Assembly (NCBI GenBank): GCA_000320545.1 | Contig: ADNK01000512.1 | Location: 63,635-127,634 of the forward strand | Direction of reading: 5' to 3' | Length of the DNA: 64,000 nucleotides | Source of the DNA: Bigelowiella natans CCMP2755 | Lineage: Eukaryota; Protista; Cercozoa | Shown here: positions 8,644 through 30,414 of the stretch, piece after piece | Layout of the letters: the number at the start of each line of letters is the position of its first letter | Numbering within the stretch: position 1 is the first letter of the stretch | The notes under the pieces: generated by a model | What the model was told of the DNA's origin: nothing | The model's database searches: none | The model's input: only the letters and a program-made list of their open reading frames with translations | Program-made: the position numbers and the translations under genes

Positions 8644-13843
<5,200 letters not shown>

Positions 13844-21653: not shown

Positions 21654-23693
21654 ATGCGTTGCTACTTCCCAACGGTGTTGATCTACATTCACATTAATAC
21701 AAATGAAGCTACTCAATTGACACTGTAATGGAAAAATCCTAAGCATTTGTTCCTGTGATAATTTAGAGAGGGGGAAGTAATCCAGTGGTGCTATATCTAC
21801 TTTCATTGAGTGTTGTGCTCCTTCTTTCTCCATGTACAGCCGTTCAAGCTCAGCAGGTTAAGATATCATCCTTTAATCATTGCCGTACCAGCGTTCTCGT
21901 CGTAACAGCTACTAATGATTGTTGCAGAAAAACTATTACAAAGACGAAACGTCGGTGCCGGAAAAGAATTTACAACAGCAATATCCAAGAAGAGGCCATG
22001 ATTCTGAGGCTTTATACGACGAAGACCGACCTGAGGCAGCCGCGCCAAGGGAATACTACCACGAAGACGACGATCAGTACAACGACGAGCACGGAAATGA
22101 TGTTGGAGCCGAGGTGCGTTTCCGAGAAACATACGAAGGCAGCGAGGAACTAGGGCAGATGGATGACATGGATCCCGTCGACGAGGGATATTACAACACC
22201 GGCAGAAGGGCTCAGGGGGGGGGGACTGGCCCATACACGCAGAACAGGCTTGAAAGTGCACCTTCCGAAGAGGAGGAGGAGGAGGAGGACCTCCTTCCTA
22301 ATGAACCGCGAGACCCAAGAATGGAGCGATATGATAAGAAAAATAGTCGATTCCATCGTGGCAGATCACAGTACACACGTTATGGGGCAGTTTTTCAGCC
22401 GCGGCTCCCGTCGGAGAGGAAAATGAATCAGGAGTCTCGCAACCTGTACCACGAGGGAATGGCAGCGGGTTTGGCATCCTGGGTCCCTCCATCACAAGGT
22501 AGTGGATCATGATTTAACTTACTAACAATGTATAATGTAAGAACCACACTACCAAAACCACCGATGATTGATAATTTTGGTGACGAAAATTACAAAATAC
22601 TCAATTAAACCTGCACTGTTGTCTCTGCGTTCTAAAAGCCACGACAAATTTCCTCTACGACACGCTACCTGAGCTTGCTCGAGAGAGGCAGATGGCGGCA
22701 CTCAGTGGCGTCAGCCGTGCACCCGAACATCATTCAACAGCCTACGAACAGGTCCCACAGCAGCAGCAGCAGCAACAACAACAAAGGCCACCGACTAGTA
22801 GGAGCAGCAGGAACTATCAAAGAGATGGAAACTTTCAGGCGACAACAGAGACAGCGGCAGCAGGACCCCCGCCACCACCCCTTTCACAACAGCAGCGTGA
22901 ACCAAGACAGATTGCATACAATAATGCACAACTGCGGCAGCAACTACCACCACCACCACCACAATTAGTATCCCAGCAGCAAAAAGAGCTTTCAAGTAGC
23001 AGCGGTGCCTTGCCTCCTATTTCAGAAGGAGCGAATAATCCCGCAACAGAAGCAGCAGAAGAACTACAAATGCGGCAAAAAGATATCGTCCAAGGAGGAG
23101 ACGCAAGCTCATACGAAACCAATACTGGTGCTACAAATGATGGCGAAGGCGAAGCGACAATGAAGACGCAACGCACCCCCCCAACACCCCCATCGTCATC
23201 TTTCAACGCCAATCAAAACATGAGCATGATGACTAGGAAGAGCAATATTACCGCTATTAAATCAACGAAATCAGCGGTAGAGCGGCAGCCCCAGCATCGA
23301 AGAGAAGGAGGGGGTGCGGGGGGAGGGGGAGTGAGTGGAGGACACCAGCAGCTCCACAAAGCGGTTGTGCTTCCCATCCCTCATCCAGCGATCACGGAAG
23401 AAGACAACACAGGCATCCTTCGCAATTCTGGTGATATCAACATCAACAAGATCCTGGACGATGATGATTCCGAATCGTTCACGATGAGGTTCCGCGAAAA
23501 GGCGGAGACCCCGCTCCCAATGACGCGCACGCACGCAAGACATGCGGCAGCAGAGGGAGAATCTGCCGTAGGTGCTTCTGGGTCTAGCAGCAGCAAACTA
23601 AAAGCACACAGCAAAGAGGAGGCCCAAGCAATGCATGGAGGGGGGCAGGCTATGTCTGCAGGAGCAGGTGGCTAACTTATTGCCGAAGAAAGG

Positions 23694-23736
<43 letters not shown>

Positions 23737-24534
23737 GGCAAATCGAAGCACAGGAGGAGGCGAGAGGAAAGTCGAGAGACCAAAATGGGTGAAGGAAGCA
23801 CAATGGATGAGAAGGAACATTGGAAGGAGAAAAACAGTTGCCAGATTATCATTTCCCCCCCAATTACATCGTTACATTTGTGCATAGACGCCTCACGTAA
23901 ACGAAAAAGAGAAGAGAGATCCTTTCTTCATATATTACATATTTCTCCTACTTAAAATAGCAAGGGATGTTCCTTCTTTAACAAACTCCTCCATCTCGTC
24001 CTTCCTTTCTTTTTTATTTGCTTGTTGTTGCAGGCCTTTTGAACTCCGTGCTCAACGTGCTGACCTCCAACAAGCGAAAGAGCTTAGAGACGTCAGCAAT
24101 GGTTGTGATTTCTCATAGAGCAGCAGCAGCAGCAGCAGCGCCAGCTGCCTCTTTGCTCATGTTCCAGTTTGTATATTTCGGGTGGTGAATGTATCATATG
24201 AGTAGTCAGTAGTTGCATCGACAGAGGTTTTGGAAAGTAGTGATGATATGATTATGGCTACAATAAGCGTGCTTTGTATCATAAATCTAGTTGAATATAT
24301 GCACACACTCTACCGTCATGTAAAATCAGCGACAACCTCTCTTACACTTCATTTTCCTGTTCCCTCGGTCTTTTCCTCTTTCTACATATCCCTCTCTCCC
24401 TCTCCCCTCCCCCCCCCCTCTCTCTTTTGCATTCGTGTTTCTCTGCTACCGCCTGTTGGTTGTCCCAGGTGGAGCGCCATGAAAGGGAGGCACTACGGAA
24501 ACAGCAGGAGTTGGACAGAGAAAAGGCATGTGTT

Positions 24535-24573
<39 letters not shown>

Positions 24574-25443
24574 AAAAGGCAGACAGAGAGAGAGAGAGAG
24601 AGAGATAGAGAGAGGGGGGGGGGGGGGGAGAGAGAGAACGGTAAGGGTGAGAACAGACGGTAATTTTTGAGAAGATGTACCTCGTCGGCGACAGATGCTT
24701 CCTGGTCCTCCTTTCAATGATCATCTCAAAATTTCGGTGGAAATTATCCTTGTGATTGTGCTAACTACTTCTACTACTACCACTACTACAACAGTCAAGT
24801 CTTGAAGAGAGCGAAAAGGTGTCACGCCGCCTGGAAATCTGTTTAGGTATTAAAGCTATTCTCGCTGTAGCTACGTAAATTATGACGACAGTCATCATGA
24901 TGATGGTGGTGGTGGTGGTGGTGGTGATAATGATTATGATGATAGTTATTGTAATTATTGTTGTTACTACGGAATACAGTCGCGGCGCAAAAGAATGGCA
25001 GCTTCGGGGTCGAGAAGGCGCGTGAGATGGTGTCAGAACAGGTTATTAACATGAGTGAGAAATGCGGCGATTGTGGTATATTTTCACGATTAAAACGCGC
25101 ATATTCCTATTGTGCACATACAGCTGCGGCTTGAATCGTGGGAGGAACGGTTGAAGAAGAGGTCTTTACACTTACATACGAAAAGAAGAAGAAGAAGATG
25201 TATTTTTATCAACGAACGACGAAAGCAAGGGCATCTTCACAACGATCCTCCATTACCTCTATGCTAGACCGAGATTTTCCGGAATATAATAGTGTTAACA
25301 ATATGACCTATTGACGTCTCGTTCAATCCGAGAAATGATTTGCCGCTGAAATTCCTATTTCGTTCTGTTGCCATTCATGCAGGGATGCTGAAGGAAAAGC
25401 GAAGCAAGCGAAGCTAGGTTTTTTTGCGTATTTACGATGTGTA

Positions 25444-25502
<59 letters not shown>

Positions 25503-26642
25503 GTTAATACATTGGATGAGACAAATCGTCGCAATGGACATTACCCTCCTTTTCGCCGTTTCCTATTCGGAATCTCTACGCAGTAGAATTATGAATCATT
25601 ACTATTGTGGATATCTTTGCTATCATCGAAGACGTTGTATGGTGTGGTCCTCCTTTCCTCGTTTTTACCCCTTTGATCGTCTTCTTTTACCAGTTCATTA
25701 AATTTACTACTACTTCTACTACTGCTGCTGCTGCCGCTGCTACAGAGCTCCGAAATCAAACGCTCGATAAAAGGAACGAAGATCTTGAGGTCCATGTTAA
25801 TAACGATCTGTCAGCTGCTACTATTAGTACTGCTCGCTTTGCCTTCTTGCTTTCCCTCTTCTCCTCCTCCTGACTAAGATGCGTGATTTATCTTCAATGG
25901 TTTCGAATCTACCGCAACAGAGCAGCAGCAACAAACACTGCTACTACTACTACAACTAATAATAATGATTATGACAATACGGCAGGAGCTGAAGAATTCA
26001 TTCGTGACGAAAGAGAATTCCTACAAGCAGAAGATTGCAGAGCTCTCTGCAAAAGCGGGCAGTCTGAAACAGCACCTGGACCAGGTGATTGACGATTGTG
26101 ATTTCGCTCTCCTACACCACCACAACCATCATCATTGCATCTTCCTCATCATGCTCAGGCCACAGCCCACGTCGCTGTTTTGCGAGAGCAAGTTCGTAGT
26201 CATCAAGATAGCGCGATCTTACAGCAGCAGCAACAACAAATGGAGAGGGACGATGACGACGACGATATCAACACCAAGAAAACCTCCTTGGCGCATGCTG
26301 AAAGGGAGGCGGAGGGGGATTCAGAGGGGGCAGACGATGGTACTATTGGTGACATTGCAGCAATGTATTTTGAAAATTGTGGTAGTAATAACTGTGTGTT
26401 TGAAGGTGATGATAATGAGGACGAAGCACAAGCCACGTCCACGAGTATGGCTTCTCTGCCGACAACGCCGCCAACAAACCCTAGATTTGCATACGCTTCT
26501 TCTTCTTCTTCTTCTTCTTCTTCTTCTCTCTCTTCATCGTTGCACTACTCCTCTTCGATCTCTTCCAGACTCAGAGCGCGGTGTGCCATGCATCAGGTGC
26601 TGCGTGCAGTGTATATTATGCATATCTGTGTGTATATGCGAT

Positions 26643-26675
<33 letters not shown>

Positions 26676-26833
26676 ATCACAACCTATTACATACACCCGC
26701 AACAACCGCATGCAAACATACAATCCATTCTCCGCCATACCAGGATTGTGGAGACTGCGCAGCAGATATTGAGTGCGGATGGTGTGGCGCCTCGCAGGTA
26801 CAGGCTTGATCTCCCTCCCCCCATCACCCCCCC

Positions 26834-26877
<44 letters not shown>

Positions 26878-27503
26878 TTCTCTTTCTTTCTCGTGCAGAC
26901 ATTTTGTATGTGACATGTTCGTTGCCTAATGTGCATTTTGTACGAACAAAGCTCCACCTCAACCAATATCGTCATATGCATCATCTCCACAGTCCTGCAT
27001 GGCCGGCAACGTACATCTCGATGGGGGGGGGAAATGCGATGCGACTACGTGGAATTACCTCTCTTGTCCTGGCTACAAATGCCAGCAATACAGGTGCGCA
27101 TCGCATGCATGTGGTACACTCTCATTATCGTCTCCACCACTTCTTAACAATTTCGCTGCCTGCTCGTCTCCCCACCCCCCAGGGACTGCAAAACCTGCGT
27201 GTCAGACCCGAAGTGTGGCGTGTGCAAGGCCTCGAGCGACTTCCGATGTGTGGCGCTTGGGGGAGGGAACAGTAACAACAATGGTGGAGTTGAGCAAGCA
27301 AGGTTTCTTTCATCTTCCTCCTCCTACACTGATGATGAGGAGGGGGGCAGAGACTGGTGTCCAGCTGGCAACCTGCTGAGAGCTACTCCAGACGCATTCA
27401 AGTAAGACTAATGAGCAGGGGTTGCATGCCGCGGCTTTCTATGACGTAGTAGTAGTAGTAGTAAACAGTTATAACAGTGCCGGCGCACCGCAAATGCACA
27501 CGT

Positions 27504-27543
<40 letters not shown>

Positions 27544-27688
27544 TTTTACTTCCCATCTTCTCCCGATAGGATAATGTCCTACAACGTGTTCGGGCGCGAC
27601 CGCTACCAAGAACGCGAGCGGTTGCACAGAATCGTCACCGAAATCGCTGATAAGTCGCCGCACTTCATCACGCTGCAGGTAGTAGTCA

Positions 27689-27720
<32 letters not shown>

Positions 27721-28065
27721 ACCAGCTTGATGTAGATTTCACGTTAGGGTAGTGTAATTCTATTAACATCAATAGTCGAAGTTTCTCGTAATTTTTGTGC
27801 TGCCTCCCCTCCCTTTCTCCTCCTCCTCCTCCTCACCCCCTAGGACGCTCACGCTTGGGTTGCAGAGGGCATCAAAAACAGCAATGTGGGGCAATATTAC
27901 CAGTACTCTGGTTTTGGAGAGAACGGCAATGAGGTAGTAATAGTGGTGATGGTAGCAGCAGCAGTAGAAAAACAATCAGTTAAAACAGAAAATTAAGATA
28001 AAGCAGTGCTCTGATGTTTCACTCATCATTACCGACGCTTGCGTACTAACAAAGCAACAAATTTC

Positions 28066-28108
<43 letters not shown>

Positions 28109-30414
28109 CTCGTTCAGAGCCCAGCTGGTCTCATGATTCTGTCCAAATTCCCGCTGAAAAAGGTACGGTTGTTACCGCAGCATTTCCCCTTCTTTTCTTC
28201 CTGACCATCATAATTACTGCCGCATCGATACACCACCCTCCCTCACGCACTTCTACCTGGCTACTACTTGGTCGCTTGATAAACAGACTGCATACTACGA
28301 GGAGCGCAAGCCAGGACAGTTCTCCTCAGATCAACGAGCGAAGGCAATGATGATACTAATGACGATTACAGTGCATGTGACAGTGAAGGCTTAGTTATCA
28401 TCGCCCTCGTGCGTAGAAAAAAGTATACGTCGACTGACTTCTTCACCATCATTATCATCGTCATCATCGCTGCCATTGATAGCAAATTGATCTTCGCCCT
28501 CCCTTCCTTCTCCGCTGATGCTCGTTGTTAGGTGCTGATAGCTGTGCCGGACCTTCAGCCACAGGGCACTGATGTATGTAATAGTAATAGTAGTAGTAGT
28601 AGTTGCTGTTGATACACTGACGCATACGAAATGGTGACAATACTAGTCTTAGTATAGAACATTAATCACATTGGAAGTGTAAAGATAGGGAGAAGAGAAA
28701 AGGAGGTGGGTGAGGTGAAATGCAATAACCAATAGAGATGAACTCCAAGTACACGCCATTCCCACCGACAGAGATGTCAATTTAACACGTGTATGATTAT
28801 TATTTGTAATATTATCAGTCGCTGGTTATCGCAACGACATCAATACCGCCTTCTGGTGAGTATTAAGGAGAATAGGAATCATAAGACGTTTCAGTGGTGG
28901 TGCCAAGCTTGGCGGCTGTACATTATCGTCATCTATTATCATAATTCTCATCATTGTCTATGACTATTCGTCGTTGTTGCCGTAGTCATTCTCACCATCC
29001 TTCTTCGTCCTCGTATACAGCGACTCCGGAGAGCAAAGCCAGCAGCTTGGATTTCATCTTCTCGGTGCTATCGATGTACAAAAAGGTTTTATAATAACAA
29101 TAATAATAGTAATAATGATAATGATAAGAATAGTAAGAATAATAAGAGGGCAACGGAGGGGCAGTTGTTTACAGATCATCTCCTTAAGCTACCACCCAAG
29201 AAATATAGGAGAGAGATTCCTCGATATCTACTATCAAATTTACTACTACTAATAATAATAATGATAACAATAATGAAAATAATGATATTACTACTATCTG
29301 ACAAAACCACTACACTCGCTATACTTATAGAACGTCGTCCTTACTGGTGATTTCAATTTTGACGCTGGTGCAGAGGTAGGAGTAGTAGTACTCCACAATA
29401 CGCGGCATGTAGGGAAAGGGGAGGGGGATGGAGGAAGAGAAAGATAGAGAGAGAGAGAGAGAGGGGGGGGGGGGGGGGGGGGGGAGAGTGAAGGGAACGA
29501 ATAATAGCTGCGACTAAGAGAATTGATCTTACAGCCGGAGTCGACGCACATTCCCGCACAATATGCAGACATATGGTAGTACCGCTGCAAACCACTTAGC
29601 ATTAGTTGTGCTTGTCTCGCTCATCCTCCTCCTCCTTTTCCTCCTCCTCCATGATGATGATGATGATGCCGTTAGCTGATGCTGAGTACGAGCGTACAGA
29701 TGATATTGTATGAACGATAATGCGGTGACGGCCTTTTACTTCATCATCATCATCATCATCATCATCATCTGCTGCTGCTGCTGCTTCTTCATCATCATCA
29801 TCATCATCTTCTTCTTCTTCTTCTCTAGGTCAACCATCCATGTGCAAGATCGAGGAGCAACGTGGGATCCAACCACAAACATGTATGCCATGAAAACGGA
29901 CAGGTCGCTGCCATCATAGATATAATACACTAACGTGTACAAAGCCCGTCTTTATGAAGAAGAAGAGTATGAGATGATGACAGAGACTTGCCGTTTGATT
30001 TCTCTTCACCCCCCTTCCCCGCACCTGCCCTTTCTGAAGTATTATGTACATTTATACCCTTCCTCATCCTCTCTCGTTTTTCTCTAGCCACTCGCTGCCG
30101 TCGCGTGTAGATCGCGTATTCGTTGGGTCAACTCATTGGAAGCCCAGGTCCCCACTCTCTCTACAATGTGTCATTTGACGATGATGATGATGATGATGAT
30201 GATAAATGATGATGACGTTTTTTGTGGGCGCTGAATTCTTGCACATATTAGAGTTTTCTTTGTTGATGTTAGCGGAATAAACAAATACCACTTGCTGTTT
30301 GTTCTCTTCAGATCCATCGAACTAGTTGGGAAATGCGATGACTCTGGAGTGTGTCCATCAAACAGATACGGCATATATACAGAATTAAGCCTTTATCAAG
30401 CGTTCTGCAGTTAG
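21654..30414 (+). CDS. Secreted multidomain protein: signal peptide, disordered region, coiled coil, two PSI-like Cys repeats and a degenerate EEP (TDP2-like) domain
   Basis: Signal VVLYLLSLSVVLLLSPCTAVQAQQ. PSI-like repeats CAMHQDCGDCAADIECGWCGASQSC and CQQYRDCKTCVSDPKCGVC. The splice 27401/27570 gives AFK|IMSYNVF, followed by exons with HFITLQ|D, GLMILSKFP, VVLTGDFN, ADIW, GATWDPTTN, SRVDRVF and CPSNRYGI; stop at 30412-30414. More than 20 exons. Confidence 0.75.

What the first reader, a model, noticed from the sequence alone, without database searches (positions are those of the whole stretch)
21654..30414. Secreted coiled-coil + 2xPSI protein fused to an apparently inactive TDP2-like EEP domain
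Seen: the ORF track stops at 27405, but a donor (TTCAA|gtaag, 27401) and an acceptor (27570) join the PSI-like repeats in frame to an EEP fold spread over about 11 small exons. Established: EEP enzymes (DNase I, APE1, TDP2, sphingomyelinase) use the motifs N, LQE, TH, GDxN, RxD and SDH. Here YN, GDFN (29346-29357), TWD..N and RVDR are retained, but LQE reads LQD, TH reads TS and PSDH reads PSNR (30355-30366). Inference: an extracellular pseudo-enzyme that may bind rather than cleave nucleic acid, phospholipid or another phosphodiester ligand, displayed on PSI modules and a coiled coil. I know of no described protein with this architecture.
Basis: partly seen in the sequence, partly recalled or inferred. 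Interest (0 to 1): 0.8.

Follow-up and report, generated by a model that had tools for sequence, protein, structure and literature searches.

The report
Secreted dead TDP2-like protein of chlorarachniophytes
This alga (Bigelowiella natans) has one real gene that joins a signal peptide, a long helical stalk and two plexin-type PSI modules to a copy of the DNA-repair enzyme TDP2 whose catalytic residues are lost; two related organisms keep the same protein, so it is probably a binding module, with an unknown ligand.

Summary
There are 12 EEP exons, not about 11.

The fusion is real.
- The public JGI model (Bigna1 69511) already uses the 27401/27570 junction.
- In the Amorphochlora amoebiformis orthologue, one exon encodes the end of PSI2 and the start of the EEP domain.
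- A third organism, unidentified and intron-poor, has the whole protein as one open reading frame.

The domain is TDP2-like.
- It scores above the Pfam Exo_endo_phos cut-off.
- Every PDB sequence hit of the orthologue domain is TDP2.
- Foldseek ranks 1-45 for an AlphaFold model of that domain are TDP2 (E about 1e-17).

The active-site changes are conserved or go further in the orthologues: E152 to D/D/G, H226 to S/S/A, D262 to D/G/G, and D350-H351 to NR/NR/NH. D350N alone abolishes human TDP2 activity. Meanwhile the domain stays 57% identical between genera, against 23% for the N-terminal region. B. natans also keeps a separate TDP2-like gene with intact motifs.

Secretion, oligomerisation and a binding role are inferences. 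The ligand is unknown. Earlier scan notes hold nothing on this family. Novelty: a new variant of a known kind. Interest is moderate.

The parts
21654..21856 (+). Two exons (21654-21674 and 21767-21856) encoding the N-terminal signal-peptide-like leader (short charged start, then a hydrophobic run of about 20 residues ending ..AVQAQQ).
   Evidence: Mapping of JGI model P0001 onto the window. Only N-terminal hydrophobic segment that orthologues share. The donor at 21674|21675 (ACG|GTGTTG) is weak, so the start is a model.
21928..23670 (+). Two large exons (about 21928-22498 and 22639-23670) for an acidic, Q/P/S-rich, low-complexity region.
   Evidence: No Pfam hit. The equivalent region is 23% identical between orthologues and is disordered in the AlphaFold model of P0007.
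24034..26596 (+). About ten small exons for the long helical (coiled-coil-like) region, with the conserved GLLNSVL..KRK and VSRRLE-C-L motifs. The last exon ends at 26596 and carries the first Cys of PSI1. Borders are approximate, and some JGI exons (for example 25631-25789) are doubtful.
   Evidence: Crude heptad scan. Two long helices, 251-315 and 326-424, in the P0007 model at pLDDT 55-78.
26744..26797 (+). PSI1, middle exon (C-x2-C-x5-C-G-W-C core).
   Evidence: tblastn with P0007. Phase and splice sites. Weak Pfam PSI hit on the enclosing frame, E 0.021. JGI reads this exon in the wrong frame.
26993..27093 (+). PSI1, last exon (..C..NVHLDGGGKC....WNYLSCPGYKC..). It is absent from the JGI model.
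   Evidence: tblastn with P0007, E 4e-17. Splice sites cag|TCC and AG|GTGCGC.
27183..27401 (+). PSI2 exon (DCKTC..KCGVC..FRCV....RDWCP..). It ends two bases before the in-frame TAA at 27403-27405.
   Evidence: PSI2 columns are invariant in all orthologues.
27402..27569 (+). Intron between PSI2 and the EEP domain. It holds an (AC)18 microsatellite at 27506-27542 and a pyrimidine tract before the acceptor.
   Evidence: The orthologues have no intron and no stop at this point.
27570..27678 (+). EEP exon 1. The Asn equivalent to TDP2 N120 is kept (codon 27583-27585). The exon ends ..ITLQ.
   Evidence: Pfam Exo_endo_phos, E 0.18 alone. 100% match to P0001 residues 939-974. Alignment to TDP2.
27844..27933 (+). 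EEP exon 2. Its first codon, GAC (27844-27846), gives Asp where TDP2 has the Mg-binding E152.
   Evidence: Alignments.
28118..28162 (+). EEP exon 3 (..PAGLMILSKFPLKK).
28287..28343 (+). EEP exon 4 (..YYEE..PGQF....RAK). The likely donor is a GC donor, AAG|GCAATG. The JGI model instead reads 11 more residues, to a GT donor after 28376.
   Evidence: The orthologues have no counterpart of the 11 extra hydrophobic residues. The JGI model itself uses a GC donor at 23670|23671.
28532..28573 (+). EEP exon 5 (strand plus loop before the 'TS' strand).
28819..28855 (+). EEP exon 6 (..VIATTSIPPS). Ser (28840-28842) replaces TDP2 H226.
29021..29085 (+). EEP exon 7 (helix ..SSLDFIFSVLSMYKK).
29331..29375 (+). 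EEP exon 8 with GDFN (29346-29357). The equivalents of D262 and N264 are kept in this species.
29535..29575 (+). EEP exon 9 (PES.HIP..YADIW). The intron in front of it is at the same position as in Amorphochlora.
29829..29903 (+). EEP exon 10 with RGATWDP (Trp 29863-29865 is equivalent to TDP2 W297). The JGI model reads through its donor to a stop at 29917.
30088..30147 (+). EEP exon 11 (SLPSRVDRVFVGSTHWKP). It is absent from the JGI model.
   Evidence: tblastn with P0007, 85% identity. Phase check (corrected by reading).
30312..30414 (+). EEP exon 12, the last one. It holds three conserved Cys and PSNR (30355-30366) in place of TDP2 P-S-D350-H351, and ends with the stop TAG at 30412-30414.
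   Evidence: tblastn with P0007, E 4e-9. Alignment A3. Conserved Cys.

Best explanation
One spliced Bigelowiella natans gene (about 21654-30414, + strand) encodes a protein of the secretory pathway. In order, it has a signal peptide, an acidic low-complexity region, a helical coiled-coil-like stalk of about 170-250 residues with a conserved Cys, two PSI (plexin-type, disulfide-rich) modules, and a C-terminal TDP2-type EEP domain.

The EEP domain keeps the TDP2 fold and much of the substrate-groove framework: the ATWDP Trp, the R-x-D/E-R strand, and a basic residue at the R206 position. It has lost residues without which TDP2 cannot hydrolyse. In this species E152 is D, H226 is S, D350 is N and H351 is R. 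Orthologues also lose N120, D262 and N264.

It is therefore a conserved pseudoenzyme. It most likely acts as a non-catalytic binding module held on a PSI and coiled-coil stalk, probably as a disulfide-linked oligomer outside the cell or in a secretory compartment.

Shown: the gene structure, the fusion, the TDP2-like fold, and the loss of catalytic residues together with their conservation pattern.
Inferred: secretion, oligomerisation and a binding function. The ligand is unknown.
For: Fusion:
- JGI model P0001 joins the parts across 27401/27570.
- Amorphochlora exon L001:15902-16006 encodes the PSI2 end and the EEP start without interruption.
- The third orthologue is one continuous ORF on genomic contigs L002 and L005, and is a 990-aa product of a 3474-nt Logan contig.
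- At least four intron positions are shared between B. natans and Amorphochlora.

Family:
- Pfam Exo_endo_phos scores 41.3, 45.4 and 26.2 bits against a 24.5 cut-off.
- Pfam PSI scores 37.3 and 24.2 bits against a 23.1 cut-off in the orthologues.
- phmmer against PDB: the best hit of P0007 is human TDP2 over the whole domain, E 5e-4. All 11 hits of the P0008 domain are TDP2, best E 1.4e-5.
- The AlphaFold EEP part has pLDDT mostly 70-95. Foldseek ranks 1-45 are TDP2, E down to 9.6e-18, TM-score (by target length) 0.71-0.79. The next families are at 1e-12.

Inactivity:
- Motif table from alignment A3.
- Human TDP2 D350N, H351A/Q, E152A/Q, D262N and S229A lose activity (PMC5778467; PMC10407441).

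Constraint:
- PSI and EEP are each 57% identical between P0007 and P0008, against 23% for the N-terminal region and 31% for the helical region.
- A canonical TDP2-like paralogue with intact N, E, H, GDTN and SDH exists in the same genome (L004).

Secretory route:
- N-terminal hydrophobic leaders are present in all three proteins, with no other shared hydrophobic segment and an acidic region after the leader.
- 21 conserved Cys positions, three of them in the last EEP exon.
Against: - No transcript of the B. natans gene could be examined. P0001 is an ab initio fgenesh model.
- No signal-peptide predictor was available. The B. natans start rests on a weak donor.
- The coiled coil rests on a crude heptad scan and on low-confidence long helices.
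- The PSI part of the AlphaFold model is below pLDDT 50.
- The B. natans protein still has Asn, Asp (for Glu), Asp and Asn at four metal or catalytic positions, so residual or altered chemistry is not formally excluded.
- Only three orthologues were found. dN/dS between the two nearest sequences is underpowered, with 6 synonymous and 5 non-synonymous changes.
- Nothing identifies a ligand.
Confidence: 0.6

Rival explanations
1. The protein has the architecture described but is not extracellular. The leader takes it into the endomembrane system, and it stays in the ER or nuclear-envelope lumen, or is passed on to the periplastidal compartment of the chlorarachniophyte plastid.
For: Chlorarachniophyte plastid and periplastid proteins also begin with a signal peptide (general knowledge). 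No experimental localisation exists.
Against: The 60 residues after the leader are strongly acidic in all three proteins, with 13-17 D+E against 3-7 K+R. This is unlike stromal transit peptides. Twenty-one conserved Cys and two PSI modules point to an oxidising, secretory or extracellular setting. No ER-retention motif lies at the conserved C-terminus, which reads ..SFC.
Confidence: 0.17
2. The EEP domain is still an enzyme, with a re-wired active site or a different phosphoester substrate.
For: In B. natans the equivalents of N120, D262 and N264 are kept, and E152 is conservatively Asp. EEP enzymes act on many substrates. Pseudoenzyme calls made from sequence are sometimes wrong (PMC10211241 abstract).
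Against: D350N alone abolishes TDP2 activity and H351A/Q does too. The third orthologue has D, G, A, G and G at the N120, E152, H226, D262 and N264 positions, which leaves no metal site, yet it is otherwise 57% identical.
Confidence: 0.08
3. These are two genes: a PSI protein ending at TAA 27403-27405, and a separate small EEP gene starting at ATG 27574.
For: There is an in-frame stop at 27403 and an ATG at 27574, at the first beta-strand of the domain. No B. natans transcript was examined.
Against: Both orthologues encode the junction without a stop. The donor and acceptor are good and in phase. A 170-nt gap containing a microsatellite would have to serve as terminator and promoter together.
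Confidence: 0.04
4. It is a decaying copy of TDP2 under relaxed selection, a fused relic with no function.
For: Several catalytic residues are lost and differ between species.
Against: The reading frames are intact in three organisms. The EEP domain is the best-conserved part of the protein together with PSI (57%). Long invariant blocks include YYEE.PGQF, LDF.FS.LS, QPES.HIP, RGATWDP, VGSTHW.PRS and CPSN.YG. Three Cys specific to this clade are conserved.
Confidence: 0.03

Closest known systems
TDP2 (tyrosyl-DNA phosphodiesterase 2, TTRAP/EAPII), catalytic EEP domain
   Same: It is the closest solved relative by sequence: only TDP2 chains are hit, and the whole domain aligns. It is also the closest by predicted fold, at Foldseek ranks 1-45. 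Shared features are the N120 Asn (in B. natans and Amorphochlora), the G-D-x-N position, the T-W-D motif of the DNA-binding grasp, the R-x-D-R strand, and the P-S-x-x-(Y/W)-G C-terminal motif.
   Different: E152, H226, D350 and H351 are replaced (and N120, D262 and N264 as well in orthologues), so no TDP2 chemistry is expected. There is no UBA-like N-terminal domain. It is preceded by a signal peptide, a helical stalk and two PSI modules. Three extra conserved Cys lie in the last strand region. TDP2 is nuclear or cytosolic; this protein is routed to the secretory pathway (inferred).
B. natans canonical TDP2-like paralogue (G000:C1742, locus L004)
   Same: Same genome and same EEP subfamily. 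Its exon hits TDP2 in PDB at E 0.002, and it aligns with the window protein over the whole domain.
   Different: It keeps N, E, H, GDTN and PSDH and has no PSI or stalk. It is presumably the working enzyme.
B. natans tandem degenerate TDP2-like protein (G000:C3316, locus L003, 704-aa intronless ORF)
   Same: It is the best paralogue hit of the orthologue P0007 in the genome, 32% identical at E 8.8e-9. It shares the (Q/E)PE.. and D.W blocks. Both of its domains also lack catalytic residues: LQG/GNFG/SPN and LQE/GSFN/SRR.
   Different: It has no leader, no PSI and no helical stalk, and carries two EEP domains in tandem. It has no significant TDP2 hit in PDB by sequence.
PSI-domain stalk proteins (plexins, semaphorins, integrin beta)
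   Same: Cys-rich PSI modules are recognised by Pfam PF01437 in the orthologues, and there are weak PDB hits to the plexin-C1 and plexin-A2 PSI regions. As in those proteins, the PSI modules sit as spacers next to a globular ligand-binding domain.
   Different: There is no sema, IPT or integrin domain and no transmembrane segment. The globular head is an EEP fold.

Membership tests
EEP superfamily (Pfam PF03372 Exo_endo_phos) | Profile match above the curated cut-off | tested here: met
   P0001 (public model of this gene) 41.3 bits, P0007 45.4 bits and the P0008 domain 26.2 bits, against a cut-off of 24.5. Single window exons are too short: exon 1 alone scores 12 bits.
EEP superfamily (Pfam PF03372 Exo_endo_phos) | Four-layer alpha/beta sandwich fold | tested here: met
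   AlphaFold model of the orthologue domain, pLDDT mostly 70-95. At least 295 PDB matches at E <= 0.001, and every listed match is an EEP protein. The model is of the orthologue, not of the window protein.
TDP2 family | Closest relatives by sequence and by structure are TDP2 | tested here: met
   (TDP2 only, best E 1.4e-5). (ranks 1-45 TDP2; next family five orders of magnitude weaker).
TDP2 family | Catalytic and metal residues N120, E152, D262, D350, H351, plus H226/S229 phosphate contacts | tested here: not met
   By position, for window / Amorphochlora / third orthologue:
- N120: N / N / D
- E152: D / D / G
- H226: S / S / A
- D262: D / G / G
- N264: N / N / G
- D350-H351: NR / NR / NH
Loss of activity in the corresponding human mutants.
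TDP2 family | N-terminal UBA-like domain | tested here: not met
   No UBA hit in Pfam scans of P0001, P0007 and P0008. The N-terminal part is leader, low complexity, helices and PSI.
TDP2 family | 5'-tyrosyl-DNA phosphodiesterase activity | not testable with these tools
   Needs recombinant protein and an assay.
PSI domain (Pfam PF01437) | Profile match above the cut-off and the conserved Cys pattern, twice | tested here: met
   P0008 PSI region 37.3 bits with two stretches, and P0007 24.2 bits, against a cut-off of 23.1. The window frame alone scores 15.6 bits, E 0.021, because PSI1 is split by introns. The Cys columns of PSI2 are invariant. The PSI part of the structure model was not confident.
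Pseudoenzyme (conserved, catalytically dead homologue) | Catalytic residues lost while the fold and the rest of the sequence stay under constraint in several species | tested here: met
   A formal codon-model test was not possible. The only close pair has 11 differences.
Secreted coiled-coil oligomer | Cleavable signal peptide | tested here: inconclusive
   N-terminal hydrophobic leaders in all three proteins. No SignalP was available, and the called starts of P0007, P0008 and P0012 differ from the likely ones.
Secreted coiled-coil oligomer | Heptad-repeat helices long enough to pair | tested here: inconclusive
   The crude heptad scan flags equivalent segments in all three proteins. AlphaFold gives helices 251-315 and 326-424 in P0007 at pLDDT 55-78. 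Only weak hits to coiled-coil proteins: CEP63 E 0.014, ROCK1 E about 1.

The most novel reading that the evidence does not exclude
The dead TDP2 head is an extracellular receptor for a phosphate-bearing polymer end, for example the 5'-phosphorylated or protein-capped ends of environmental or prey nucleic acid. It would be presented as a disulfide-linked multimer on a PSI and coiled-coil stalk by bacterivorous, filopodial chlorarachniophytes. That would be the first case of a DNA-repair phosphodiesterase fold recruited as a cell-surface recognition module.
Probability: 0.1. Interest if true: 0.8.

Novelty: new variant of a known kind. Interest (0 to 1): 0.48.

Why it matters
TDP2 is known as a nuclear repair enzyme that removes topoisomerase II adducts. 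I found no description of a conserved, catalytically dead TDP2-type domain, or of one attached to PSI modules and routed to the secretory pathway. If the reading holds, this adds the TDP2 branch of the EEP fold to the list of enzyme scaffolds reused as binding modules. It also gives a defined, lineage-restricted candidate surface or secreted protein for chlorarachniophytes, whose extracellular biology is almost unstudied.

Practically, it corrects the public B. natans model 69511. That model reads PSI1 in the wrong frame, omits one PSI1 exon, includes a probable intron, and lacks the last two exons. The work also shows that the genome carries three kinds of TDP2-like genes, of which only one looks active.

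Tried and rejected
- Pfam and PDB searches on single window exons were nearly uninformative because the exons are too short.
- A six-frame Pfam scan of the whole genome did not flag this locus.
- phmmer of P0001 against PDB found nothing. The model lacks the C-terminal exons and has a probable retained intron.
- The look-up of encoding contigs on P0001 found no record.
- The third word-index protein search, with the domain alone (142-451 aa candidates), found nothing at E <= 0.001. Stand-alone relatives and short transcript fragments therefore remain unsampled.
- The metagenome and viral contig scans found no relative.
- The hits P0002-P0006 of the 36-aa exon search are TPR or cadherin repeat proteins that match a ..RYQE.E..HR.. 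string by chance. I rejected them.
- dN/dS between the two nearest sequences is underpowered.
- Look-ups of expression values for the B. natans and Amorphochlora genes in paper supplements found nothing held as text.
I then worked from coordinates only.
- The full-length P0007 model is low confidence, mean pLDDT 44.5. I used it only for the long helices.
- The separate-genes reading and the simple-decay reading were considered and rejected on the orthologue evidence.

Full report
**What is in the window.** The window is eukaryotic, intron-rich and full of microsatellites. Earlier notes of this scan name the genome as Bigelowiella natans. The public protein that matches this locus comes from JGI 'Bigna1', which agrees with that name.

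The upstream frame stops at TAA 27403-27405. A donor AA|GTAAGA (27401|27402) and an acceptor after a pyrimidine tract (27569|27570) join it in phase to IMSYNVFG.., the first strand of an EEP domain. I read twelve EEP exons, listed under parts. All phases add up. All borders are GT-AG, with one possible exception: a GC donor at 28343|28344.

LQ|D spans 27678/27844, and the 'TS' motif lies in exon 28819-28855. One correction: exons 10 and 11 end at 29903 and 30147, as the sequence shows.

**Handling of the spliced model.** Window exons were searched one by one by reference. Whole-protein analyses used database proteins (P0001, P0007, P0008, P0010, P0012) and intronless loci.

**The public model.** A search with the 36-aa first EEP exon against 1.84 billion representatives returned a 100% match at residues 939-974 of P0001. 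This is a 1155-aa fgenesh model, JGI Bigna1 69511. It uses the same 27401/27570 junction, and Pfam finds Exo_endo_phos in it at 41.3 bits.

Mapping it back onto the window and comparing it with orthologues shows four faults.
- It reads the middle PSI1 exon in the wrong frame.
- It skips the last PSI1 exon.
- It contains 11 hydrophobic residues (28344-28376) and a hydrophobic stretch (from 25631) that have no counterpart in orthologues.
- It runs through the donor at 29903 to a stop, so it lacks the last two exons, including the PSNR motif.

**Orthologues and the fusion.** Two word-index searches found two relatives.
- P0007 is an 839-aa hypothetical protein of Amorphochlora amoebiformis (NCBI), 49% identical over PSI2 plus EEP.
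- P0008 is 956 aa, from a Logan contig, and 57% identical to P0007.

The Amorphochlora annotation was made with funannotate trained on RNA-seq assemblies (PMC12730881). Its gene spans 18.8 kb. One exon, L001:15902-16006, encodes the end of PSI2 and the start of the EEP domain in a single stretch.

The third protein is a single open reading frame on gene-dense, intron-free contigs. These are L002 from run ERR13954268 and L005 from NCBI assembly GCA_977009605.1. A cluster member of 990 aa comes from a 3474-nt contig and begins with a signal-peptide-like leader. The organism is unidentified. Its CCT subunit gene is 55-88% identical, exon by exon, to the B. natans one, so it is probably a fairly close relative.

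At least four intron positions coincide between B. natans and Amorphochlora: after the Arg that ends PSI1, before ..PAGL.., before PES.HIP, and in the Arg before the last exon. The junction between PSI2 and the EEP domain is therefore coding sequence in two other organisms. The two-gene reading of the window is very unlikely.

**What kind of EEP domain.** phmmer of P0007 against all PDB sequences gives human TDP2 as the best hit, aligned over the whole domain (E 5e-4). The next EEP protein, a sphingomyelinase, is at E 0.7. The domain of the third orthologue alone hits 11 distinct sequences, all TDP2, with a best E of 1.4e-5. The ESM Atlas look-alikes are single-domain eukaryotic EEP clusters, including TDP2.

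An AlphaFold model of PSI plus EEP of the third orthologue folds the EEP part with pLDDT mostly 70-95. The PSI part is not confident. Foldseek places TDP2 chains of mouse, human, zebrafish and C. elegans at ranks 1-45 (E to 9.6e-18; TM-score by target length 0.71-0.79). Neutral sphingomyelinase and nocturnin follow at about 1e-12.

Pfam PSI is above its cut-off in both orthologues, with two stretches in one of them.

**The active site.** Alignment A3 and the HMMER alignment to TDP2 give the following, in human numbering.

| TDP2 residue | Window | Amorphochlora | Third orthologue |
|---|---|---|---|
| N120 | N | N | D |
| E152 | D | D | G |
| H226 | S | S | A |
| D262 | D | G | G |
| N264 | N | N | G |
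| D316 | D | E | D |
| D350-H351 | N-R | N-R | N-H |

W297 (in ATWDP) is kept in all three. The review PMC5778467 reports that D262, E152, S229 and H351 substitutions abolish human TDP2 activity, and that D350N markedly abrogates it through loss of Mg binding. PMC10407441 shows that purified E152Q, D262N, W297A, R206A and D350N proteins lose both the 5' and the 3' activities.

D350N is the one change shared by all three orthologues. No duplicate or alternative exon that could restore LQE or SDH appeared in the tblastn.

**Constraint.** Between P0007 and P0008 the identities are 23% (N-terminal region), 31% (helical region), 57% (PSI) and 57% (EEP). Long blocks of the EEP domain are invariant in all sequences. 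Three Cys in the last exon are conserved in this clade and absent from the canonical paralogue.

This is the pattern of a maintained pseudoenzyme, not of decay. A codon-level test was not possible: the only close pair differs at 11 sites.

**Paralogues.** The same genome has a canonical TDP2-like gene (L004). It has intact TYNIW, FQ|E, FHLDS, GDTN and PSDHYG motifs, and its exon hits TDP2 in PDB. The genome also has an intronless 704-aa ORF (L003) with two tandem TDP2-like domains, both lacking catalytic residues.

**Location and mechanism (inferred).** All three proteins begin with a short charged stretch and a hydrophobic run. For P0007 and P0008/P0012 the likely start differs from the called one. 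No other hydrophobic segment is shared. The 60 residues after the leader are strongly acidic.

The mature proteins share 21 Cys positions. One lies in the helical region (RRLE-C-L), fifteen in the PSI pair and three in the EEP tail. An odd number fits an inter-chain disulfide. A crude heptad scan and two long AlphaFold helices (251-315 and 326-424 of P0007, pLDDT 55-78) support a helical stalk.

My reading is a secreted or surface-exposed, probably multimeric protein. Its dead TDP2 head binds a ligand in what remains of the substrate groove. The ligand is unknown. A phosphate-bearing molecule is a guess based on the fold and on Arg at the H351 position in two of the three proteins.

**Comparison with the known, and novelty.** It works like, and is descended from, the TDP2 branch of EEP enzymes. 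It fails the catalytic-residue and UBA-domain tests, so it should not be filed as a TDP2 enzyme.

No paper in the searchable library holds PSI together with TDP2, or chlorarachniophytes together with TDP2. The searches for TDP2 pseudoenzymes returned nothing relevant. Earlier notes of this scan have nothing on TDP2, EEP or PSI.

Only three orthologues were found, all from chlorarachniophytes or a close relative. Metagenome and viral scans were blank. Sampling was limited by the length windows of the word-index search.

I rate it a new variant of a known kind, of moderate interest. The architecture is well established. The function is open.

Noticed in passing
L003:886-3000 (G000:C3316:51385-53499): Intronless 704-aa ORF of B. 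natans: an N-terminal region of about 120 aa with no Pfam hit, followed by two tandem TDP2-like EEP domains. Both lack catalytic residues (LQG/GNFG/SPN and LQE/GSFN/SRR). It is a second, apparently intracellular, dead TDP2-like protein in the same genome.
   Followed up: partly
L004:1002-2206 (G000:C1742:31501-32705): Canonical TDP2-like gene of B. natans in at least three exons, with intact N, E, H, GDTN and PSDH motifs. It is probably the organism's working TDP2.
   Followed up: partly
L001:8033-19347 (Amorphochlora amoebiformis, BAAHQB010000286.1): Several exons of the orthologue are locally duplicated together with flanking intron sequence. For example, 12037-12129 and 12201-12293 are 97% identical, and the exon for ..QAPAGLVMLSKYP occurs four times between 18810 and 19347. 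The introns are packed with GA/GT microsatellites, and an 839-aa protein spans 18.8 kb. I did not examine whether the extra exon copies are ever spliced in.
   Followed up: partly
L002:1-8429 and L005:1-11280: Contigs of an unidentified eukaryote (run ERR13954268; assembly GCA_977009605.1). They are GC about 59%, gene-dense and have no visible introns, in contrast to the intron-rich chlorarachniophyte genomes, yet they carry the closest orthologue of the Amorphochlora protein. The called starts of the orthologue (P0008, P0012) are internal and miss the signal peptide.
   Followed up: partly
window:23670-23672 and window:28343-28345: Probable GC-AG introns. The JGI model needs a GC donor at 23670|23671. 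Comparison with orthologues favours a GC donor (AAG|GCAATG) at 28343|28344 over the GT donor used by JGI.
   Followed up: partly
window:23694-30215: Many introns of this gene carry a di- or trinucleotide microsatellite: (GA)n, (TG)n, (AC)n, (TC)n, (GTA)n and (TGA)n, 25 TRF rows in 9 kb. These give long spurious open frames such as 25887-27272.
   Followed up: no
window:1534-7748: Large + strand ORFs with ABC_tran, ABC2_membrane_3 and ABCA1-like R1 hits. This is an ABCA-type transporter gene upstream of the locus.
   Followed up: no
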